IMG/VR virus record: IMGVR_UViG_3300017963_000190
Coordinates: 62,001-126,000 of that record
Direction: 5' to 3' (one strand)
Length of the DNA stretch: 64,000 nt
How positions within the stretch are numbered: position 1 is the stretch's first letter; the number at the start of each line of letters is the position of its first letter. Made by a program: the position numbers and the translations under genes. A model generated the notes under the pieces. That model did no database searches and was not told the DNA's origin. It saw only the letters and a program-made list of their open reading frames with translations. Of the stretch, positions 17,038 to 25,554 are shown one piece after another.

Positions 17038-17063
17038 TGGCCCCTAGGACAGCCTAGGGGCCA
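17038..17063 (-). terminator. Perfect 11-bp stem-loop (terminator or processing hairpin)
   Basis: TGGCCCCTAGG-acag-CCTAGGGGCCA in the gap at the end of the replication/array unit; only a weak U-tract. Confidence 0.6.
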
Positions 17064-17168: not shown

Positions 17169-17366
17169 CTACTTCCTGGAGACGAAAATCAATTTCAGTG
17201 CGTCCCGGGCTCTAGGTGAAATGTCTATTTTGACGTTCACGTTTCCAGTCCCCAAACAAACCGTCTCCAAGAGCTCGTTTAGTTTGTGGAGCTCTACCGC
17301 TATCTGTCGTAGAGGGTCTTCCTCAAACTCAGGCTGCACGTTTGGTTCTGTGCTACTAGTACTCAT
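17169..17366 (-). CDS. Small hypothetical protein
   Basis: 65 aa, starts 2 nt after the upstream stop, AGGAG SD. Confidence 0.6.
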   Translation of the reverse strand: MSTSSTEPNVQPEFEEDPLRQIAVELHKLNELLETVCLGTGNVNVKIDISPRARDALKLIFVSRK

Positions 17367-17368
17367 CT

Positions 17369-18799
17369 CTACTCCTGATCATCCACCCCGATCCCCCAGT
17401 GCTCCGACAGCCGATAAAAAGTCTGCTGGAACACGTACCCCTCCGGCCACGACGCCGCCCGTCTACGCCGGATGATTATGTCGCGCCACCGGTCCACGAT
17501 GCACCGAGCTTGAAGCTCCGCGATCAAAGCAGCCCGCTGGTCGTTGGTGGAGCACAGCTCCCACAGGCACCGGCTCAAAGCCTTGCGGTACGGCTCACTG
17601 CTATCGGCGGTGACGTAGGTGTTGTCGTCCGGGATGGGCTGCCCGAACTCCTCGGAGTAGATTTTCTTGCACGCTTCCTTATCCGGCAGCTTGTCGGCCC
17701 ACCCGAGCTCGCCTTCGCGGTCCCACTCCCTGGGGCTTTTGTGCGGCAAAAAGCCACCAGAACCGGAGTTGATGGTGATATCGCAGCTGATCATCAGGAT
17801 CCGCTCGAATTGGGGATCTAGGCTCGTGGGGAAGTTGTCGATAGATTTGATGGCGTCCAAGTCCTCGATGCCGAAGTCTTCGAGCTTAAAGCCCACCTTC
17901 AGCAGATTTCGTATGGAGGGCTTGAGCGTGTACTTGAGCAGGTACGCGTCGATCTGCGTGTCCCTGCCGTCGCTGCTCCCGAACCAATACGACACCTCTT
18001 CGGCGATCTCCTTGCCCGCCCAGGGATTCTCCTCCCTGTTCTGGTCGTTCGCTTCCCGGATCTTCGGCACGAGCTCAGGAGCCCCACCCAGCTTCACCAG
18101 CGTCTCAGCTGAACCGCGGTTCACGTTCCAGATGCCGTAGTTCCACCAGTCCTCCAGGGCCACTGGCTTCCCCTCAGAGTCTGTCCCCACGATGATCCCG
18201 TAGTACCCGTACCCATCCTTCCCAGCCTCCCACGTGCACTCACACTCCGCGATACGCAGGGCTATAGGAGCTCTCCAGCCACCTAAATCAGGCGTCATCG
18301 CTTTCCACGTCGCCTTGCCCACGATCCCATCTACCACGAGCCCGTAAGCTTCCTGGATGCTCTTAGCCACCCGCTCCGTGTTGGGCCCGAAGGATCCATC
18401 AGCAGTAGTCTGCCAGTCCGGCCGGTTCTTGATGTCACCAAGCTTGCTGGCCGCCATCTGAAACAGATTCGCCGACGGCCGGTTGCGGTTGCGCTGCGCG
18501 GTGATGATGCTGAGCTGGTATGTCTTTGGTGGTAGTGGCACGGGGGGATCCTCCTCGACCTGCAGCACCTCAACGGCCCCGCTGGTTATCTTGTCGAAGC
18601 CAACCGACATCGTCAGCTGGACACTTCTGTTCTCAGCAGCCAGCATCACCTCCGAGGACATGTTCTCGGTGCCGACCGCGTTAACGGTAAAAATGCTTCC
18701 AGGTTCGAGCAGAATTTCTCCGCTCATCGACGGCCCCTGGAAAGTGGCCTTGAACTGCTCTAAGATGCGGAACACATCTCCTACCTTGGGCTCACTCAT
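17369..18799 (-). CDS. Peptidoglycan-binding-domain protein with a putative lysozyme-like catalytic domain (endolysin candidate)
   Basis: PG_binding_1 motif DGSFGPNTERVAKSIQEAYGLVVDGIVGKATW; then E.G..YG...NYGIWNVN.GS and DITINSG, reminiscent of lysozyme-like folds. Confidence 0.7.
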   Translation of the reverse strand: MSEPKVGDVFRILEQFKATFQGPSMSGEILLEPGSIFTVNAVGTENMSSEVMLAAENRSVQLTMSVGFDKITSGAVEVLQVEEDPPVPLPPKTYQLSIITAQRNRNRPSANLFQMAASKLGDIKNRPDWQTTADGSFGPNTERVAKSIQEAYGLVVDGIVGKATWKAMTPDLGGWRAPIALRIAECECTWEAGKDGYGYYGIIVGTDSEGKPVALEDWWNYGIWNVNRGSAETLVKLGGAPELVPKIREANDQNREENPWAGKEIAEEVSYWFGSSDGRDTQIDAYLLKYTLKPSIRNLLKVGFKLEDFGIEDLDAIKSIDNFPTSLDPQFERILMISCDITINSGSGGFLPHKSPREWDREGELGWADKLPDKEACKKIYSEEFGQPIPDDNTYVTADSSEPYRKALSRCLWELCSTNDQRAALIAELQARCIVDRWRDIIIRRRRAASWPEGYVFQQTFYRLSEHWGIGVDDQE

Positions 18800-19010
18800 C
18801 TTGCTTCTCCTCTGGTTCCTCGTAGTTTAGGAGATCAAGCCTTCCGGTCCTGGTGACCCGAATTTCGGTGCCCGGCCGTAGCGTCAGCGTTAAAACCCGA
18901 CGCTCGGTGCCGCTGCTAACGGCGCTGAAGCTGTAGTCACCGAAGAACTTCACCTCGATGGCATCGTGTACGAGGCAGATGTCTCCCTCTTTAATCTCAA
19001 TCTCGGCCAT
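18792..19010 (-). CDS. Small array protein 5 (KxGD...LRPG module)
   Basis: 72 aa; ends EEPEEKQDE. Confidence 0.7.
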   Translation of the reverse strand: MAEIEIKEGDICLVHDAIEVKFFGDYSFSAVSSGTERRVLTLTLRPGTEIRVTRTGRLDLLNYEEPEEKQDE

Positions 19011-19209
19011 TTTCTGGTTCCTCTGCTTTCTTGGAGATGACCTTTAAATCCCCATCGAGGACCTCGATGACAGCAGCACCTGGTTTGAGGTTGAGCTCAA
19101 TGGACGAACCGTCGCTCACCAAATCTACTTTGATGCGCCCGGACACCAGGACAATCTCCCCTCGCTCGAATTCCACCTCGTCGCCTTTGGCGAGCTTAAT
19201 CTTGGCCAT
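18997..19209 (-). CDS. Small array protein 4
   Basis: Start ATG 19209 (MAKIKLAKGD); ends EEPENGRD. Confidence 0.7.
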   Translation of the reverse strand: MAKIKLAKGDEVEFERGEIVLVSGRIKVDLVSDGSSIELNLKPGAAVIEVLDGDLKVISKKAEEPENGRD

Positions 19210-19360
19210 CGCTATCTTCCTCTCGATCAGCAACTCGGTCCGCGATGAGCTCCAGGTTCTCCTCGATCGTGCAGCCGTCTTCTTCGCAGCTGATGGTTAC
19301 GCGCGCCGGCCCCACGTGGATGGTCAACTGGTCACCGGGGGCCAGCTTAGTCTTGCGCAT
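19196..19360 (-). CDS. Small array protein 3 (54 aa, absent from the ORF track)
   Basis: MRKTKLAPGDQLTIHVGPARVTISCEEDGCTIEENLELIADRVADREEDSDGQD; fills the gap with 14-nt overlaps on both sides. Confidence 0.7.
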   Translation of the reverse strand: MRKTKLAPGDQLTIHVGPARVTISCEEDGCTIEENLELIADRVADREEDSDGQD

Positions 19361-19556
19361 CCTCTGGTTCCTCTCGCTCTTTTTCTAGGACGCCCTTGCT
19401 CCTGAATACCTCGATTTGGCAGCCTCGCTCCAGCTGCAGCAACAGGGCCTGATCTTCTCCCTCCAGGGGAACCTCTCGAAAAAGGTAGGCACCATCAATT
19501 AGGACCACGGTGGTTCCTGTTGCCTTGAACTTGTCTCCCACTTTAAGTTGAATCAT
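19347..19556 (-). CDS. Small array protein 2
   Basis: MIQLKVGDKF...LQLERGCQIEV...EEPEDAQD. Confidence 0.7.
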   Translation of the reverse strand: MIQLKVGDKFKATGTTVVLIDGAYLFREVPLEGEDQALLLQLERGCQIEVFRSKGVLEKEREEPEDAQD

Positions 19557-19839
19557 CCTCTGGTTCCTCCAGGGGCAACGTCTTCAGGCTCTTGATCTCC
19601 ACCGGGCACCACACCCGGATCTCCGTACCGTCCTCCTGATAAGCCACAAACTCCACCACCACCTTGGTCGCGTTCGTCGCCGGACCAACCACCACACCCT
19701 TGGCCCCAGCTTCAAAAATGATTTTCGTGTTCAGGTAGTCCAAAGAGCTCGGCTGGAGCTGGAGATCGATGCTCTTCTCCGAGAAGACCTCGGTGCCGCT
19801 GGCCAGTGTGGGCCGGTTGGGATAAGGCTTACTCATCAC
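19543..19839 (-). CDS. Small array protein 1
   Basis: 98 aa, beta-rich; ends EEPEDDST. Confidence 0.7.
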   Translation of the reverse strand: MMSKPYPNRPTLASGTEVFSEKSIDLQLQPSSLDYLNTKIIFEAGAKGVVVGPATNATKVVVEFVAYQEDGTEIRVWCPVEIKSLKTLPLEEPEDDST

Positions 19840-20566
19840 CAGCCTCTTGACCCTCGGTCACCTCCCAATCCAGGTACATCTTGGGGAGCATGTCCTCGGG
19901 CTTCCAGTTGGCCTTCGTTTCCTCGATGGTTGCGCTCTGGTACTTCCCTTTGCTGATGTAGCCGGGGTCTGTTTCTTCTAGCGGGTCGGTCTTGAAGAAG
20001 ACCACCTGGCCGATGCGGCGGCCTACGACTAGGGGGATCGTATTGAAGCGAGAGTTGTTGGTGACCTCTAAAGTCCAACGATTACAATAACTTATGTCTC
20101 CTAGGCCAGCGCAGCGGGCCACCTCCAAGAAGTTCCGTCCAGCAGAAGACCGCGCCTTCATCATGGTGGTGACGTCGTTGGAGCAGCCACCAATAAATTC
20201 CAGGGTGTGTGCCAGAATGGCTTCCTGTGGCCGAATCAAAATGACTTGATCCTTTGGGCGGATATTTTTCAGCAAGCCACGCCCGAGCTGTGATGCTAGC
20301 ACACGTTCCGCTGGCTGTGCGCGCTCAAGGTTCCATAGTTTCTGGACATGGTCTTCATCGTATGGATTGTAGAGGTACTCTGCAACACGGAGCGCAGGAA
20401 GCCCCGCACTGTCACCATTTTGCTCACGCCAGTAGTATTCCCCCAACGTTACATCGTAGCTGTTGGTTCCTACGTTCTCCGGCCTAAACGGGTCTATAAC
20501 GATCTCTTTTGCTTGGAGGCAGCTAAAAATTGCAGTACGGCTCAATAGACTATAGCGTACAGACAT
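19829..20566 (-). CDS. dcd: dCTP deaminase
   Basis: NSYDVTLG, ARSSAGR, WTLEVTN, GRRIGQVVF and YISKGKYQ motifs; likely start ATG 20566. Confidence 0.9.
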   Translation of the reverse strand: MSVRYSLLSRTAIFSCLQAKEIVIDPFRPENVGTNSYDVTLGEYYWREQNGDSAGLPALRVAEYLYNPYDEDHVQKLWNLERAQPAERVLASQLGRGLLKNIRPKDQVILIRPQEAILAHTLEFIGGCSNDVTTMMKARSSAGRNFLEVARCAGLGDISYCNRWTLEVTNNSRFNTIPLVVGRRIGQVVFFKTDPLEETDPGYISKGKYQSATIEETKANWKPEDMLPKMYLDWEVTEGQEAGDE

Positions 20567-20643
20567 CTCTACATTTCTCCCGGAGGAGCTCGTTCTGCAC
20601 GAGCACCTAATTATGATTTTACAAGATTGGGTTGCGTATGGAG

Positions 20644-21507
20644 CTATGCAGCAGCTGGGTTGATCCAAATGCACTCAACGCGCTTCTGGAAAGCCTTGAT
20701 GACGCCACTGCCTTGGAGTTGGGTATGCTTCGTTCGTGCTGCCGCGTTGCAGGATCTGTCAAACTTGACGCACTCCCAGCCATTCTTTTCGAGCGGCGCG
20801 TACATGTCATTTGGGTACCCTGAAAGGATAGCCATCCCGCGTATATTGAGAAGCACGTCTACGAGCTTCTCGTGGTCTTGTGTCTGCATCTCAAAAGAGA
20901 ACCAACCGTCTCTGCGGGTCTCTTTAGGATAAGGGGGGTCTAAGTAGAACAGAGTGTCTTCTGCGTCAAACTTTTCAACAACGACAGACCAGTCCTTGTT
21001 GTAGATTTTAACCTCTTTCATTCTATCTGCAATACGAGGGAGCATTTGAATGGCCTGGACGTAAGCGCTGATTGGCTGCGCCATTCCCCTCACACTGGAG
21101 TTTGTTACAAGTCCCCACGACGATCTGTCGAGCATTCCTCCCAGCGATTGACGGGAGTCCACGAAGAACATGCTGGCGCGTTCCACCATGTCTTCCTCAG
21201 CTGGAGCTTGATCTTTGCTTTCTAGTCGCTCCTGTCTGCTATAAGGTGTGAGCTCCAGCCGTTGGATCAGCTGCGCACGAAGATCATCATCGACAATGCA
21301 ACGAAATAAACCGGCGAACCTTGGATCGAGGTCGTTGTAGACCTCCATAGCCGACCTTGGTTTTACAAGCAGAAGATTCGCTCCACCACCAAATGGTTCC
21401 ACATAGGTGCGGTGCTCCGGGAAATAAGGCAGGATGCGTTTGCGCAGGACACCCTTTCCTCCAATCATCTTGATTGGAGACCTAAGCACGCGTTCACGCA
21501 TCATCAT
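20644..21507 (-). CDS. dam: DNA adenine methyltransferase (Dam/D12 class)
   Basis: IGGK, YVEPFGGG, YNDLD and YLDPPY motifs. Confidence 0.92.
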   Translation of the reverse strand: MMMRERVLRSPIKMIGGKGVLRKRILPYFPEHRTYVEPFGGGANLLLVKPRSAMEVYNDLDPRFAGLFRCIVDDDLRAQLIQRLELTPYSRQERLESKDQAPAEEDMVERASMFFVDSRQSLGGMLDRSSWGLVTNSSVRGMAQPISAYVQAIQMLPRIADRMKEVKIYNKDWSVVVEKFDAEDTLFYLDPPYPKETRRDGWFSFEMQTQDHEKLVDVLLNIRGMAILSGYPNDMYAPLEKNGWECVKFDRSCNAAARTKHTQLQGSGVIKAFQKRVECIWINPAAA

Positions 21508-23686
21508 TCTCCACAGGGATAGGTACGATGGTCGATACTTTCATCTTTTCCAGCGCGGCTACCGTTGCCTCTGCGGATTTGATTGCGCGCCGACCATCCC
21601 CCAGCACTACCAGGTTGCTCTCGCCAACAGAGAAAGTTGTGGCACTTGGGTCATCCAAGATGTCAACCGCGTCTATTTCAGTGCCATCGCCCAAATAGGT
21701 TTGCGTGTCAGCTTTGGCGACACGCACTGCGAGGACCTCGACCTTTTTGCGTCCAATTCCAGGAAGGCGTTTGCCTTTAACGTTTGGTCGAGTGATCTTG
21801 AACTCTTCTCCCTGAAGGAGGATTTCCTCGTCGTCGCTCTGTATCACTACCGTGTCATCTTGGTTGACGGCTCCGGCAAAAATGATATCGTGTTCTGGCA
21901 TCTCTTTGAATACCATGAACTGCGTGCGCCGCTGATCAGGAGGAAACGCTACGTAGTCTCCGTTGGCAGTAATCACGAGCATGCAGTCGTCGTTCTCCGA
22001 TGCCACACCTAAGATGGTAGCTACGTTTTTGTCGAACTTGTCTGGGAAAGACAGCGACGCGCTTTGACCGATGTTGTCTTCTGATACCACCGCAAACTTG
22101 CTGGGTGTTGCTACCAGGTTGACGTAAGGCCACGCTGCGCGGCTTTTCACTGGCGGCTCCGAGAAGCTGTCGAACTTTCCTTGAGGAGTTACGCCTACGT
22201 AGTAAGTGGTTTCTTTCGCGGTAACGTCCAGATCTTCTTTGCCGCCTCGCAGTCGTGTTCCCCGCTTGTCCGCGTACTTGAGCATCTCCTGCAGCCTGCG
22301 TTCTACCACGCCGTCTATGTTCTCTAGATCGTCTGCGACCGCACCCAAGCGCTTTTTATGTTGGTCGATGCGCTCACCTAGCTTCTTCTCGTTCAACTTG
22401 CGCACCAGTCCACGTACGGTGGTGTCCAATAATACTTGAGCCTGCCGTTCGTTGAGCTCCAACTTATTTTCAAGCTGCCGTAGAATCTCATCCATCGAGT
22501 TGGCGGAGTTGATGATCTTCATCACGAGGCTTAGATTCTGCACCGCTATATACCGGGCTTGATCCGCCTCCAGTTTCTTCTGAAGCTCCTCCTGCTCCGT
22601 TTGTAGCACGAGCTTTTCTACTTTACGCCTGAAGTTGATGAACACCTGGATGAGCTTCTTCAGCCCACACAACCGCGGACGTTTTTTCGAGTCCAGTACA
22701 TAGAATTGGTAGGAGACGGATGACTTCAGGAGCGGCAGCACGCGGTCGTTGACGATCTTAGGATCCGTGAATTCCACCACGATGCGGGTGCCTACATCCA
22801 TAGACCCTTCATCGTTGGCTGCTGATACGAGCAGTTTAGCATCAGCTAGTTTCTGCGTCTGATTAAGTAATTTGGTTGCCTTTTTTGAGGTGAACCCTGG
22901 GTCCAGACCGGTGATAACGAGCTTTTGTCTACCGCGCTTTCCTTCCTCAAATCGATAATTGCATGAGAAAGTCAGCTTGCCTTGACCAGTCTCGTAGAGT
23001 TCTCGCAACTCGGCTTTTCTAGATAGCAAAACACCTGCCCCAGAGTCCGGCCCCTTGATGTGCTTGAGCAGCTCGTCTGTGGTGCATTCCGGGTTCTTTA
23101 GGGTGTGCAGCGTAGCGTTGATTACTTCACCCAGGTTATGTGGAGGAATGTTTGTCGACATCCCCACAGCCACGCCCGAGCTTCCGTTTACTAGCACCAT
23201 CGGCACACGGGTGGGTAGTAAAATAGGCTCGTCGTGTTCCTCTGTGTAGGATTTCATCAGAGGCATCACGTGGATGTCATCAAATAATCTGTCGGCGAAT
23301 TCGGTGAGCTGCGTCTCTGTGTAACGATAGGGTGCGGGTGGTTCATCCATCAAGGATGTCTTGCCACCGAAGTTGCCGTGTTTTTCGATCAGCGGCTGTC
23401 TGAGCCATCCCATATTCACCAGGGCTCCGTAGCATGCGGAATCCCCGTGGGGGTGGTAGCGGCCGATCACCGATCCAACTACTTGGGCACATTTAACTGG
23501 GATGGCTTTGCTGTGTCGTTTTAGCTCATGCAGCGCCCACAACGTGCGGCGTTGTACGGGCTTTAGGCCATCGCGTCCATCCGCGATAGCTCTGTCCTCG
23601 ATGACGTAGAATCCATAGCTGCGGAGGTTGTCGCGAACTATCTCGGCCGTTTCTTTCTTGGAGGAGACTGTTATTGATAGAGGCAT
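21494..23686 (-). CDS. gyrA: Type IIA topoisomerase subunit A (GyrA/ParC-like)
   Basis: RDGLKPVQRR, YHPHGD, catalytic RYTE, NGSSGVAVGMSTNIPPHN; likely start ATG 23686. No canonical GyrA-box seen. Confidence 0.92.
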   Translation of the reverse strand: MPLSITVSSKKETAEIVRDNLRSYGFYVIEDRAIADGRDGLKPVQRRTLWALHELKRHSKAIPVKCAQVVGSVIGRYHPHGDSACYGALVNMGWLRQPLIEKHGNFGGKTSLMDEPPAPYRYTETQLTEFADRLFDDIHVMPLMKSYTEEHDEPILLPTRVPMVLVNGSSGVAVGMSTNIPPHNLGEVINATLHTLKNPECTTDELLKHIKGPDSGAGVLLSRKAELRELYETGQGKLTFSCNYRFEEGKRGRQKLVITGLDPGFTSKKATKLLNQTQKLADAKLLVSAANDEGSMDVGTRIVVEFTDPKIVNDRVLPLLKSSVSYQFYVLDSKKRPRLCGLKKLIQVFINFRRKVEKLVLQTEQEELQKKLEADQARYIAVQNLSLVMKIINSANSMDEILRQLENKLELNERQAQVLLDTTVRGLVRKLNEKKLGERIDQHKKRLGAVADDLENIDGVVERRLQEMLKYADKRGTRLRGGKEDLDVTAKETTYYVGVTPQGKFDSFSEPPVKSRAAWPYVNLVATPSKFAVVSEDNIGQSASLSFPDKFDKNVATILGVASENDDCMLVITANGDYVAFPPDQRRTQFMVFKEMPEHDIIFAGAVNQDDTVVIQSDDEEILLQGEEFKITRPNVKGKRLPGIGRKKVEVLAVRVAKADTQTYLGDGTEIDAVDILDDPSATTFSVGESNLVVLGDGRRAIKSAEATVAALEKMKVSTIVPIPVENDDA

Positions 23687-23688
23687 CA

Positions 23689-25554
23689 CTACTCCACGAT
23701 ATCTAGTAGTTCTTTTCGCGCAGCTGCGTCCAGTCCCATGTACAGTAGCACCCGATCTTGATCGTCTTTGCCTCCCCACACCACCTGGCACGTGTCTCGC
23801 GTTTTTTCATTCATCGCGTAGACACGTAATGCGTCTGCCCCAGATTCACCCAAGCCCTTGAATCGAGTAATGCGCAGCTTCCTGGGATTGCCTAGCTTCT
23901 CCCGAACTTCTGCTGCCGTATCTCCGAATACACGTTGTTTGGCAGTGACGCCCATGAATAGGGGACTGTTCACCACAAATAATCTGCCGGCCTCGATGAT
24001 CTCCGACAGGTGCTTGGCGAAGAATGCCAGCAACAGTGCTTGGATGTGGTGTCCATCTGTGTCCGCATCCATGAGCAAGTAGATTGCACGGTAACGGCAT
24101 TTCTTCAGGTCGAACACCGGTCCGATGCCTGTGCCGATAGCCTGTGCAATGTTGGACAGCTCTGTGTTCTTTAGAGCCTCCTCCACACCTCCCTTGCGTG
24201 CAGCGTTGAGCACCTTCCCCCGAAGGGGGAGTACTTCTTGGTAGTGGGTATTCCCCTTCAAGCTGATGCGTGCTTGCTTCACTGTGCCAAAGGCGCCATT
24301 CCCCTCGACGATGTAGAGCTCGCGTTTGTCCGGAGGGCAGTCTGGAGCGGCACAAAGCTTACCTGGTAGGATGTTTCTGGCTCCAGCGGCTACCTTCGTC
24401 CCACGCACAGCCTTTTGCTTAGCGCGGTATTTCTTGCGCTCGTCCCTAAGGTAGACTGCGTTTTCAAGCAGAGCTTCCATGCTTGTTGGGTTGGCCGCGG
24501 CGAACTTGCGCATGGCACCGTCTATGACCCGCTCAACGCCCTCCTGTACATCATGATTTTGTAGACTGCGTTTAGTCTGACCACGAAACTCCGGTTTGAG
24601 CACGTGGGCATGGACAATGGCGATCATGCCATCACGGATGTCCTCTCCACGTAGTCTACCCATTTTCCCATTTGCATGGTCGGTGACCACACGTTGGATG
24701 GCCTTTTTTGCGCCAGCAACGTGCACGCCGTGATCTGGGGTATGGGTAACGTTGACGAAAGAGCTCCAGCGTTCTGGTCCCCCTCGATCTGTCCAGACAA
24801 CCACAGCGTCCAGCGCATCTTCTTTCACCACGATTGGATCATGGAGATACGCTAGACCATCGGTCTGGGTCTTGAGCATATCTAACAGACCATCTTTTGC
24901 ATGGAACCGTTCTATAGGATCCCCGTTCACCTTGAACTCTATGGTTAGCCCAGGGCACAGGTAAGCGATGTCACGTAGCCTCCCCCGTACAAGCTTCGGA
25001 TCCAGCTTCGCCCTTTTGAAGATGGTGTAGTCCGGACGGAATTCAATCCTGGTGCCGAAACGCATCTTGCGCTTTGACCGCTTAACCTTAGTTACTGGCT
25101 CACCACGCTCAAAGGTTTGCTGGTACACCTTCTCATTCTGCACAGTCCAGACGATGAGCCTCTCGGATAGCGCATTGGTCGCCTTGACGCCCACACCATG
25201 CAGCCCAGCTACAGCACTGGTGTACGCTCCATGCCCAAACTTTCCCCCTGAGTGGAGCTTCGTTAGGACTGCGGTCAGCATCGGTAGCCCAGTCTTTTTG
25301 TGCTTCTTTACTGGGATGCCCCGGCCATTGTCGATGACAGTGACCACCTGCTGCTCGGTGTCTATTTTTACGCCGATCGCGGTAACATGTCCATCCATGT
25401 ACTCATCCACCGCGTTGGCTACTACCTCCTCGATGATGTGGTGCAGCCCTTCGGATCCAGTGTCGCCAATGTACATGGCCGGGCTTTGCCGCACCGGCTC
25501 CAGATTCTCCAGAATGCGTATCTGGTTGGCATCGTAGTGACGTTTTTTGGCCAT
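23689..25554 (-). CDS. gyrB: Type IIA topoisomerase subunit B (GyrB/ParE-like)
   Basis: GHKL ATPase (EVVANAVDE, DNGRGIP, GLHGVG); Toprim (VEG, PLRGK, DADTDG); RFKGLGE. Confidence 0.95.
   Translation of the reverse strand: MAKKRHYDANQIRILENLEPVRQSPAMYIGDTGSEGLHHIIEEVVANAVDEYMDGHVTAIGVKIDTEQQVVTVIDNGRGIPVKKHKKTGLPMLTAVLTKLHSGGKFGHGAYTSAVAGLHGVGVKATNALSERLIVWTVQNEKVYQQTFERGEPVTKVKRSKRKMRFGTRIEFRPDYTIFKRAKLDPKLVRGRLRDIAYLCPGLTIEFKVNGDPIERFHAKDGLLDMLKTQTDGLAYLHDPIVVKEDALDAVVVWTDRGGPERWSSFVNVTHTPDHGVHVAGAKKAIQRVVTDHANGKMGRLRGEDIRDGMIAIVHAHVLKPEFRGQTKRSLQNHDVQEGVERVIDGAMRKFAAANPTSMEALLENAVYLRDERKKYRAKQKAVRGTKVAAGARNILPGKLCAAPDCPPDKRELYIVEGNGAFGTVKQARISLKGNTHYQEVLPLRGKVLNAARKGGVEEALKNTELSNIAQAIGTGIGPVFDLKKCRYRAIYLLMDADTDGHHIQALLLAFFAKHLSEIIEAGRLFVVNSPLFMGVTAKQRVFGDTAAEVREKLGNPRKLRITRFKGLGESGADALRVYAMNEKTRDTCQVVWGGKDDQDRVLLYMGLDAAARKELLDIVE

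What the first reader, a model, noticed from the sequence alone, without database searches (positions are those of the whole stretch)
17369..19839. Cassette-like array of five mini-genes with a stereotyped junction, capped by a cell-wall enzyme carrying the same module
Seen: five consecutive 54-98 aa genes. Four successive junctions overlap by exactly 14 nt (19543-19556, 19347-19360, 19196-19209, 18997-19010). The motif GAGGAACCAGA(G/A) recurs at four junctions (one further copy is degenerate), acting as SD for the next gene while encoding the acidic EEPE tail of the previous one. The proteins share a faint pattern: N-terminal (K/P)xGD (LKVGD, LAPGD, LAKGD, IKEGD) and a later LxL.(P/R)G..I.V (LTLRPGTEIRV, LNLKPGAAVIEV, LQLERGCQIEV, IIFEAGAKGVV). 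The first ~80 aa of the downstream PG-binding protein repeats it (PKVGD...ILLEPGSIFTV). The block also looks GC-richer than its flanks. Inference: an expandable gene accordion of highly diverged small beta-barrel paralogues with a conserved recombination/translational-coupling joint. The free modules may co-assemble with, inhibit, target or decoy for the module fused to the muramidase. I know of no described system with this layout.
Basis: partly seen in the sequence, partly recalled or inferred. Interest (0 to 1): 0.82.

Follow-up and report, generated by a model that had tools for sequence, protein, structure and literature searches.

The report
Diverged tandem copies of a lysin domain
In one 260-kb phage, the start of a cell-wall-binding protein gene (a small SH3-like barrel domain) appears to have been copied several times out of frame, leaving five tightly overlapping mini-genes in front of it; the array is real and tidy, but it is old and shows no copy-number change in the available assemblies, and its function is untested.

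Summary
Five minus-strand mini-genes (97/98, 69, 54, 70 and 72 aa) tile 18792-19839. Four junctions overlap by 14 nt and the last by 8 nt. GAGGAACCAGAR occurs exactly four times in 64 kb, only at these junctions.

The four inner genes are true paralogues: their cores still align after the shared ends are removed. Profiles link them weakly but reciprocally to the N-terminal module of the downstream 476-aa PG_binding_1 protein. That module is predicted to be an SH3-like beta-barrel ending in the same EEPE motif. The fifth junction is a DNA homologue of the others, which puts the enzyme's 5' end in register with the repeat. The 14-nt overlap follows from this: codons 4-5 of each copy, read in the shifted frame, give the stop.

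Best reading: an old, lineage-specific tandem duplication of the enzyme's 5' module, kept as a translationally coupled operon.

- No fetched relative locus has the array; four place the deaminase gene directly before the enzyme.
- All five mini-proteins are database orphans.
- The "accordion" and "recombination joint" ideas are unsupported: cores are at saturation and all assemblies are identical.
- "Muramidase" is unproven.
- The first gene's membership and the fold of the four inner proteins are unresolved.
- Co-assembly with the enzyme is an analogy only.

The parts
19829..20674 (-). dCTP deaminase gene, the upstream neighbour. Its stop overlaps the g98 ATG by 8 nt (ATGAGTAA).
   Evidence: Pfam DCD 4e-25 and PHROG dCTP deaminase 6e-27; sequence read.
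19543..19836 (-). g98 (97 aa from the ATG; 98 aa from the GTG at 19839). First mini-gene, full-size (~88 aa) with an EEPEDDST tail. Membership of the family is unproven at sequence level; its predicted neighbours are SH3-like.
   Evidence: ORF; called as 97 aa by an independent caller; hhalign to the inner minis P=0.016, tail only, and to N-modules P=0.18; ESM Atlas structural neighbours DUF4926, NifZ, NdhO and FTR variable chain, TM 0.57-0.63 by query; orphan.
19347..19556 (-). g69. Its N-terminus (MIQLKVGD) is the most like the enzyme N-termini of relatives (MIELKPGD, MIDIKVGD).
   Evidence: core similarity to g72 p<0.001.
19196..19360 (-). g54, the shortest paralogue, with a degenerate tail (EEDSDGQD).
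   Evidence: core similarity to g70 p=0.002.
18997..19209 (-). g70 (ATG start at 19209).
   Evidence: core similarity to g72 p=0.008; AlphaFold model uninformative, pLDDT 43.
18792..19010 (-). g72, the last free paralogue and the best hit of the relatives' N-module profile among the minis.
   Evidence: hmmsearch E=0.018, rank 2 of 815 window ORFs.
19543..19569 (-). Junction J1 (g98/g69): GAGGAACCAGAGG, ATG, then a 14-nt overlap ending in TAA.
19347..19373 (-). Junction J2 (g69/g54), same layout.
19196..19223 (-). Junction J3 (g54/g70). The motif is degenerate (GAGGAAGATAGC) but the 14-nt overlap is kept.
   Evidence: repeat family D1, 69% over 29 nt.
18997..19023 (-). Junction J4 (g70/g72). 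Motif with a final A, and a TGA stop.
18792..18821 (-). Junction J5 (g72/enzyme). Same motif, 87% identical to J2 over 23 nt. The ATG at the J2-equivalent position is absent and the start lies 9 nt downstream, giving an 8-nt overlap.
   Evidence: Repeat family D4.
18560..18799 (-). N-terminal module of the 476-aa protein (residues 1-80). Predicted all-beta, SH3-like barrel, ending in VEEDP and followed by a disordered Pro-rich linker (residues 80-97).
   Evidence: AlphaFold pLDDT 77-89, seven strands; Foldseek hits to eL21, SH3 and the TagH C-terminal domain over about 80 columns; ESM Atlas neighbours SH3_3, SH3_13 and DUF4926, TM 0.52-0.73; consensus L.PVEE.PE in homologues.
18296..18409 (-). 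PG_binding_1 domain (residues 131-168).
   Evidence: Pfam 7e-10; PDB profile hits to endolysin PG-binding domains only.
17396..18277 (-). Conserved helical C-terminal domain (residues ~175-468) of unknown family. E185, C188 and E191 are invariant. A wall-hydrolase role is presumed from the architecture only.
   Evidence: pLDDT mostly above 85; no Pfam, NCBIfam, PDB or Foldseek match; invariant columns.
17169..17366 (-). 65-aa gene immediately downstream, probably the last gene of the same transcript.
   Evidence: no family hits.
17038..17063 (-). Terminator-like hairpin (11-bp stem, 8 GC) that would end the transcript.

Best explanation
The block is an old, lineage-specific tandem array of duplicates of the 5' segment of the phage's PG-binding wall-enzyme gene. 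The duplicated segment is start codon, SH3-like N-terminal module and the first residues (EEPE) of the acidic linker.

The repeat unit is 1 mod 3 in length, so each copy runs into the next in the +1 frame. It then ends at a T-R-A stop formed by codons 4-5 (xxT RAR) of the next copy. This is why four overlaps are exactly 14 nt.

The EEPE-coding GAGGAACCAGAG also places GAGGA 9-13 nt before the next ATG. The copies are therefore separate, translationally coupled genes on one transcript: deaminase, five minis, enzyme, 65-aa gene, terminator.

Shown:
- the anatomy;
- paralogy of the four inner genes;
- homology of all five junctions;
- coding-type codon usage;
- absence of the array from relatives;
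- the predicted SH3-like fold of the enzyme's module.

Inferred:
- derivation from the enzyme's module;
- membership of g98;
- coupled translation.

Most likely function (inference by analogy, about 0.25 on its own): the free proteins are stand-alone SH3-like modules made in fixed proportion with the enzyme. They would act with it, either by associating with its own module or by binding the same wall or partner ligand, as in multi-subunit endolysins.
For: - Anatomy and motif statistics.
- With the shared N-motif and tail removed, the cores still align colinearly: g69-g72 p<0.001, g54-g70 p=0.002, g70-g72 p=0.008.
- A profile of relatives' N-modules, built without the window's own, ranks g72, g69 and g70 second to fourth of 815 window ORFs, directly after the enzyme.
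- The reverse profile of the minis ranks enzyme homologues and g98 directly after itself.
- hhalign of minis against N-modules gives P=2.6e-4.
- Homologues' modules end in L.PVEE.PE with no gene junction there, so EEPE is ancestral to the module.
- J5 is 87% identical to J2 over 23 nt.
- Four relatives have deaminase directly followed by the enzyme, and none of the fetched relative loci has the array.
- The family's N-terminus varies from 0 to 2 modules.
- Mini-gene frames score as coding.
- SD position matches other genes of the window.
- A terminator follows the 65-aa gene.
- SH3-like fold.
- Precedents for free wall-binding modules assembling with an endolysin: PMC9430671 (1:5 complex), PMC4777826, PMC7098653, PMC10604209 (PlyC, one PlyCA plus eight PlyCB).
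Against: - Sequence links between the minis and the N-module are individually weak (E 0.009-0.7; hhalign probability 42%, N-terminal 21 columns only). They rest largely on the KxGD and EEPE ends.
- g98 shares only the tail at sequence level.
- The AlphaFold model of g70 is uninformative (pLDDT 43), so a common fold for the four inner proteins is not shown.
- The minis are 20-30 aa shorter than the module, which requires an internal deletion.
- There is no expression, interaction or activity evidence.
- The enzyme's catalytic nature is itself unknown.
- The known multimeric endolysins use identical free copies of a C-terminal domain, not diverged paralogues of an N-terminal one.
Confidence: 0.6

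Rival explanations
1. Same origin but divorced function. The duplicates have been taken over for jobs unrelated to the wall enzyme, for example small host-takeover or anti-defence proteins. They stay next to it only because tandem duplication put them there.
For: Cores have diverged to 19% identity, far more than is needed to keep a common ligand. The five proteins differ in length from 54 to 97 aa. Small SH3-like barrels are common stand-alone phage proteins of unknown function. All five are orphans.
Against: Tight +1 overlaps and preserved SD/ATG keep all five coupled to the enzyme's translation. The N-terminal KxGD motif and the acidic tail, which the enzyme family also conserves, are retained.
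Confidence: 0.25
2. One reading: a currently dynamic gene accordion or cassette array whose conserved junction is a recombination joint, letting copy number and order change quickly.
For: - A conserved 16-29-nt junction flanks every unit.
- The array exists in this lineage only.
- Synonymous sites in the junction are conserved (third-position identity 0.54-0.62, against 0.32 in the cores).
- Contig ends from independent assemblies cluster inside the block at 19375, 19299, 19291 and 18392. This could reflect structural variants.
Against: - Copies are at saturation divergence, not near-identical.
- Every assembly is 100% identical over the region it covers.
- No variant proteins at 90% identity or more.
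- No second array was found by the motif-pair search in viral or metagenome contigs.
- No inverted repeats or unusual RNA structure at the junctions.
- Dual coding plus the SD explains most of the junction conservation.
- One break cluster coincides with an extremely GC-rich palindromic stretch (19300-19318), so a technical cause is plausible.
Confidence: 0.1
3. The mini-ORFs are decaying, non-functional relics of duplications, or chance ORFs.
For: No homologues anywhere. g54 has lost part of the unit and most of the motif. The g70 model has low confidence.
Against: All five frames stay open and tile exactly despite saturated divergence. Every indel has been a multiple of 3, since all units are 1 mod 3. 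Every unit keeps ATG plus SD. Codon-usage scores equal those of bona fide genes in the annotated frame only.
Confidence: 0.04
4. Programmed +1 frameshifting at each junction fuses modules into a multi-SH3 polyprotein ending in the enzyme.
For: All six junctions are +1 relative to the upstream frame, and an SD-like element precedes each.
Against: Each unit has its own ATG at a normal SD distance. No slippery codon sits at the stop or shift site. The junction RNAs have no stimulatory structure, with z-scores from -1.0 to +0.9. The uniform +1 phase is simply inherited from the duplicated junction.
Confidence: 0.02

Closest known systems
Multi-subunit endolysins: PlyC (one PlyCA plus eight PlyCB), and single-gene two-polypeptide endolysins such as CTP1L, LysIME-EF1, LysP7951 and phi2638A (PMC10604209, PMC4777826, PMC7098653, PMC9430671, PMC12203907)
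   Same: A wall-targeting module is made as a free small polypeptide alongside a lysin-type protein, from the same transcription unit. In several of these cases the free module must assemble with the full-length chain. One complex is 1:5, the same count as one fused plus five free modules here, which may be coincidence.
   Different: In those systems the free subunits are identical to each other, and in the single-gene cases to the fused domain. They are C-terminal domains produced from an in-frame internal start (or from one extra gene in PlyC), and they come from phages of Gram-positive hosts. Here there are five separate out-of-frame genes at 19-36% identity, derived from an N-terminal module. 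Assembly is untested and the enzyme's activity is unknown.
Bacterial SH3b-type wall-binding domains of peptidoglycan hydrolases (Pfam SH3_3, SH3_5 and related) and small stand-alone SH3-like barrels (DUF4926, NifZ, NdhO)
   Same: The predicted fold of the enzyme's residues 1-80 and of g98. The position is that of an accessory domain of a PG-binding protein.
   Different: No sequence match to any SH3 Pfam family. The predicted module has seven strands. Ligand binding is unknown. The fold of the four inner proteins is not established.
Gene accordions (tandem amplification under selection, as described for poxviruses; recalled from general knowledge, not searched here) and lineage-specific tandem paralogue families of large phages
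   Same: Head-to-tail copies of one gene segment in a single lineage.
   Different: Accordions are recent, near-identical and polymorphic in copy number. Here the copies are saturated in divergence and identical in all assemblies. The duplicated unit is a domain-coding part of a gene, not a whole gene.
Translationally coupled overlapping genes in phage operons
   Same: A stop-start overlap with the SD inside the upstream coding sequence, in one long same-strand cluster (54 of 60 candidate ORFs of the window are on the minus strand).
   Different: The overlap is an unusual and repeated 14 nt, because it is a copied junction rather than independently evolved ATGA-type overlaps.
Integron-type cassette arrays
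   Same: A run of small ORFs separated by a recurring sequence.
   Different: The recurring element lies inside coding sequence and lacks the imperfect inverted repeats of attC. The ORFs are paralogues of each other. The adjacent genes are replication or nucleotide-metabolism genes and the enzyme, not an integrase.

Membership tests
Tandem paralogue array derived from the enzyme's N-terminal module | The units are homologous to each other beyond the shared junction. | tested here: met
   For g69, g54, g70 and g72, cores without the N-motif and tail align colinearly with p from <0.001 to 0.008. Not met for g98, whose core p-values are 0.04-0.58.
Tandem paralogue array derived from the enzyme's N-terminal module | The units are homologous to residues 1-85 of the enzyme family. 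| tested here: inconclusive
   Reciprocal profile ranking is striking, but E-values are 0.009-0.7 and hhalign gives P=2.6e-4 with probability 42%. The DNA homology of J5 to J2 supports it.
Tandem paralogue array derived from the enzyme's N-terminal module | The array is absent in relatives that keep the ancestral gene order. | tested here: met
   L004, L007/L008, L016 and L017 have the deaminase gene followed directly by the enzyme. The other relatives carry an unrelated 97-132-aa gene upstream.
SH3-like small beta-barrel | A small all-beta barrel whose structural neighbours are SH3 or SH3b domains. | tested here: met
   On predicted models only, for the enzyme's residues 1-80 and for g98 (ESM model pTM 0.54).
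SH3-like small beta-barrel | The same fold for g69, g54, g70 and g72. | tested here: inconclusive
   The AlphaFold model of g70 with the four-sequence alignment has pLDDT 43. The Atlas feature score of 0.81 for g69 is at noise level.
SH3-like small beta-barrel | A sequence match to a curated SH3 family. | tested here: not met
   No Pfam, NCBIfam or PHROG family above threshold. SH3_1 scores E=0.07 on g70 only.
Multi-subunit (heteromeric) endolysin | The large subunit is a peptidoglycan hydrolase. | tested here: inconclusive
   PG_binding_1 is present. The conserved C-terminal domain has no recognisable catalytic family.
Multi-subunit (heteromeric) endolysin | The free subunit is identical to the fused domain, made from an in-frame internal start or one dedicated gene. 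| tested here: not met
   There are five distinct out-of-frame genes, with identity to each other of 24-36%.
Multi-subunit (heteromeric) endolysin | Physical assembly of the free and fused modules. | not testable with these tools
   No multimer prediction or experiment was available.
Gene accordion | Near-identical copies and copy-number polymorphism between isolates. | tested here: not met
   Core third-position identity is 0.32. All fetched assemblies are 100% identical over the parts they cover. Each protein's 90% cluster has one member. Caveat: contig ends cluster in the block.
Integron-like cassette array | An attC-like inverted repeat at each junction and an adjacent integrase. | tested here: not met
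   None of the six inverted repeats found lies at a junction. The neighbours are topoisomerase, Dam methylase, deaminase and the enzyme. The whole 260-kb genome was not scanned for an integrase.

The most novel reading that the evidence does not exclude
The five diverged free SH3-like proteins and the enzyme's own module assemble into one hetero-oligomeric wall-binding unit, or compete for it. The array would also be structurally variable in natural populations, as hinted by the clustering of contig ends. The phage could then retune the targeting or timing of its wall enzyme by adding, losing or diversifying free modules. That would be a multi-gene, diversifying counterpart of PlyC-type lysins in a jumbo phage.
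Probability: 0.1. Interest if true: 0.75.

Novelty: new variant of a known kind. Interest (0 to 1): 0.45.

Why it matters
The locus is a clean natural example of new small phage genes being made from a piece of an existing gene. An out-of-frame tandem copy of a domain-coding 5' end yields a free-standing domain protein, and its stop, Shine-Dalgarno site and start are all supplied by the copied junction.

It also extends the idea of lysins that come with free copies of their targeting module. Here the module is N-terminal and SH3-like, sits in a large phage, and has five diverged copies.

The downstream protein family has a confidently modelled C-terminal domain of about 300 aa that matches no known family. 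That domain is a target in its own right.

If the free modules do assemble with or regulate the enzyme, the system would be a new design for multi-component wall enzymes. If they do not, it is a tidy but ordinary lineage-specific paralogue expansion.

Tried and rejected
- Pfam, PHROG and NCBIfam scans of all six proteins found nothing for the minis. Only PG_binding_1 was found for the enzyme.
- tblastn of the enzyme against 50,697 phage records gave no match.
- A profile of the four inner minis against 1.84 billion representative proteins found only the minis themselves. The other six hits are ankyrin, WD40 and DUF11 repeat proteins, which are spurious summed matches.
- A word-indexed search with g98 found only itself.
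- AlphaFold of g70 with the four-sequence alignment gave pLDDT 43 and was unusable, so no fold search was run on it.
- The Atlas search with g69 was at noise level.
- Foldseek of the enzyme model against PDB and BFVD gave nothing at E<=0.001.
- The motif-pair DNA search in viral and metagenome contigs returned 14 and 87 stretches of DNA. All except the source contig are Glu/Pro-rich in-frame repeats, not gene junctions.
- The 124-132-aa genes upstream of the enzyme in some relatives were tested as possible module relatives. They are a different family.
- g98 was tested against the second module of two-module homologues. There was no profile signal.
- RNA structure and inverted repeats at the junctions showed nothing above shuffles.
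- A search for closer relatives through the deaminase gene found only a 56%-identical one that was already known.
- Searches for alternative continuations at the contig break points in viral contigs found only the source contig.
Full report
**Context**

The window is part of a 260-kb viral contig, IMGVR_UViG_3300017963_000190. It encodes a tail sheath and a family-A DNA polymerase. Nearly all its genes are on the minus strand.

On that strand the local order is:
- topoisomerase IV subunit A-like gene (21494-23791)
- Dam-type methyltransferase (20644-21507)
- dCTP deaminase (19829-20674)
- the five mini-genes
- a 476-aa protein with a PG_binding_1 domain (17369-18799)
- a 65-aa gene
- a strong terminator-like hairpin (17063-17038)
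- genes of 337 and 1159 aa

Yes. The ORFs and all overlap coordinates are as stated. GAGGAACCAGAR has four perfect matches in 64 kb, all at mini-gene junctions. With one mismatch allowed there are six matches where 0.72 are expected, and no shuffle reaches that number.

The repeat finder returns families of 16, 23 and 29 nt covering motif, ATG and the first codons. The DNA alignment gives a consensus GAGGAACCAGAGGATGnnCAAGATTnAG.

Every junction, including deaminase/g98 and g72/enzyme (8-nt overlaps, ATGAGTRA), places the next gene in the +1 frame. All unit lengths are 1 mod 3 although they range from 151 to 280 nt.

The 14-nt overlap has a simple cause. Codons 4-5 of each downstream gene are xxT RAR (L/I/T followed by K/E). 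Read one base out of phase, they give TAA or TGA.

The GC rise is real. It peaks in the enzyme gene (0.595, against a window mean of 0.518 +/- 0.029), with the array at 0.562.

**Are these genes?**

In each mini-gene the annotated frame has the best codon-usage log-odds of the six frames (0.21-0.29 bits per codon). The enzyme scores 0.25 and the deaminase 0.13. The 124-aa antisense ORF scores below zero.

An independent gene caller on another assembly called the same five genes.

GAGGA lies 9-13 nt before each ATG. Other genes of the window carry GAGGAG at about the same distance.

**Are they related to each other?**

Whole-protein local alignments are significant for g69-g70, g69-g72, g70-g72 and g54-g70 (z = 7-10). 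With the KxGD N-motif and the acidic tail cut off, the cores still align colinearly: g69-g72 p<0.001, g54-g70 p=0.002, g70-g72 p=0.008.

The four inner genes are therefore whole-unit paralogues, not unrelated ORFs sharing a linker.

g98 shares only the tail at sequence level.

**Are they related to the enzyme's N-terminus?**

Twenty-three homologues of the 476-aa protein were found, at 33-55% identity. Most begin M-I/V-E-L-K-x-G-D. About 80 residues later they reach a consensus L.PVEE.PE, followed by a Pro/Glu linker, the PG-binding domain and a conserved C-terminal domain. KxGD and EEPE are thus features of the enzyme's module in phages that have no gene junction there.

The evidence linking the minis to this module is:
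- A profile built from ten relatives' modules, without the window's, finds the window's enzyme at 1.7e-12. It then finds g72 (0.018), g69 (0.33) and g70 (0.73) as ranks 2-4 of 815 window ORFs.
- The reverse profile of the four minis ranks enzyme homologues and g98 directly after itself.
- hhalign gives P=2.6e-4, but over the N-terminal 21 columns only.
- At DNA level, J5 in front of the enzyme is 87% identical to J2 over 23 nt. The ATG of the J2 type is absent and the start sits 9 nt downstream.

Together these make descent from the enzyme's 5' module the best reading. Each sequence signal is weak on its own.

**Fold**

AlphaFold of the enzyme with 16 homologues gave mean pLDDT 82.5. Residues 1-79 form seven beta-strands, 80-97 are disordered, then come the PG-binding helices and a helical C-terminal domain.

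Foldseek found nothing significant in PDB or BFVD. The 80-column hits are SH3-like barrels (eL21, an SH3 domain, the TagH C-terminal domain) and small phage proteins of 68-92 aa.

The ESM Atlas places residues 1-82 next to SH3_3, SH3_13 and DUF4926 models, several of them inside NlpC/P60 or M15 wall hydrolases (TM 0.52-0.73). It places g98 next to DUF4926, the ferredoxin-thioredoxin reductase variable chain and CRR42-like models by structure, and next to NifZ and NdhO clusters by sequence features. To my knowledge these are SH3-like barrels.

The model of g70 was useless (pLDDT 43). "One fold" is therefore supported for the enzyme's module and g98, and open for the four inner proteins.

**The enzyme**

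Only PG_binding_1 is recognisable. The C-terminal 300 aa are confidently modelled and strongly conserved, with invariant E185, C188 and E191 in RIAECxCTWE. They match no family or solved structure. "Muramidase" is therefore an assumption from the domain architecture.

**Relatives**

Loci were fetched for ten homologues. L004, L007/L008, L016 and L017 have the deaminase gene directly followed by the enzyme, and L004, L007 and L017 also show the topoisomerase and Dam genes upstream. L002, L009, L011, L012 and L018 carry an unrelated 124-132-aa gene upstream, and L005 a 97-aa one. None has mini-genes.

The array is thus an insertion specific to this lineage.

The family's N-terminus is modular in general. 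One homologue has no module, one has a stub, most have one, and four have two xFQxGDxV-type modules in one chain.

All five mini-proteins are orphans in 1.84 billion representatives and in the 5.8-billion-cluster index.

**Age and dynamics**

Codon-aligned identity among the four inner genes is as follows:

| Region | Amino-acid identity | Third-position identity |
|---|---|---|
| Core | 19% | 0.32 (about random) |
| N-motif | 48% | 0.54 |
| Tail | 60% | 0.62 |

The junction is constrained in two reading frames and also as an SD, which accounts for most of its conservation.

The junctions have no inverted repeats and no RNA structure above shuffles.

The array is 100% identical wherever it is covered in assemblies from five different samples or runs. 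This is an old, fixed array, not an accordion in the usual sense.

One caveat is unexplained. Every shorter contig that reaches the block ends inside it:
- at 19375, 2 nt before J2 (one Logan contig, with a second Logan contig showing the same truncated g69)
- at 19299 and at 19291, from opposite sides in two JGI samples
- at 18392

The 19291-19299 cluster lies next to a very GC-rich palindromic stretch, so a technical drop is plausible. Strain-level structural variation cannot be excluded without reads.

**Mechanism proposed**

The proposed history has four steps:
1. Unequal recombination duplicated the segment from start codon to EEPE of the enzyme gene, with a unit length of 1 mod 3.
2. Each upstream copy became a separate ORF that stops inside the next copy's codons 4-5.
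3. The EEPE codons double as the SD.
4. Repeated duplication and long divergence, with only in-frame indels tolerated, gave five coupled genes in front of the enzyme.

Function is inferred by analogy. Several endolysins work as complexes of one catalytic chain with free copies of their wall-binding module:
- PlyC has eight PlyCB per PlyCA (PMC10604209).
- CTP1L (PMC4777826).
- LysIME-EF1 (PMC7098653).
- LysP7951 is a 1:5 complex (PMC9430671).

The free SH3-like proteins here could associate with the enzyme or share its ligand. I rate this at about 0.25. A divorced function for the paralogues is about equally likely.

**Verdict**

This is a new variant of known kinds: a tandem paralogue expansion, and a lysin accompanied by free targeting modules. 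Interest is moderate.

Noticed in passing
window 18392, 19291, 19299, 19375 (loci L015, L123, L124, L125): Contigs from independent assemblies that reach this block all end inside it. They are 100% identical to the window up to their ends. One ends 2 nt before junction J2, and two from different samples meet at 19291-19299 from opposite sides. The cause could be strain-level structural variation or a coverage drop at the GC-rich stretch 19300-19318.
   Followed up: partly
window 17369-18799 (and about 17300-20250): The enzyme gene has the highest GC of the whole window (0.595 against 0.518). Homologous genes in ten related loci match their flanks within about 0.025. The enzyme-plus-array block may have been imported by recombination from a GC-richer relative.
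   Followed up: partly
window 17396-18277 (enzyme residues ~175-468): A strongly conserved, confidently modelled helical domain matches no Pfam, NCBIfam, PDB or Foldseek entry. E185, C188 and E191 are invariant. It is a candidate new wall-enzyme family found in about 24 large-phage contigs.
   Followed up: partly
homologues P0011, P0012, P0014, P0018, P0021, P0023: The N-terminus of the enzyme family varies between relatives. P0023 has no module, P0021 a 27-aa stub, most have one, and four have two xFQxGDxV-type modules in one polypeptide.
   Followed up: partly
window 19829-19836 and 18792-18799: g98 and the enzyme both start ATGAGTRAGCC (MS-K/E-P) and both overlap the upstream stop by the same 8 nt (ATGAGTRA). 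This may be a trace of the first duplication or a coincidence.
   Followed up: no
window 17038-17063, minus strand: A strong terminator-like hairpin (11-bp stem, 8 GC pairs) follows the 65-aa gene and probably marks the end of the transcript that carries the array and the enzyme.
   Followed up: no
window 19031-19405, plus strand: A 124-aa ORF lies antisense to g54 and g70. A naive longest-ORF caller would prefer it, but its codon-usage score is below zero, so it is very likely not a gene.
   Followed up: yes
L002, L009, L011, L012, L018 (gene immediately upstream of the enzyme homologue): A conserved 124-132-aa protein family of unknown function, unrelated to the mini-genes, sits directly upstream of the enzyme in the relatives that lack the deaminase-enzyme adjacency.
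   Followed up: partly
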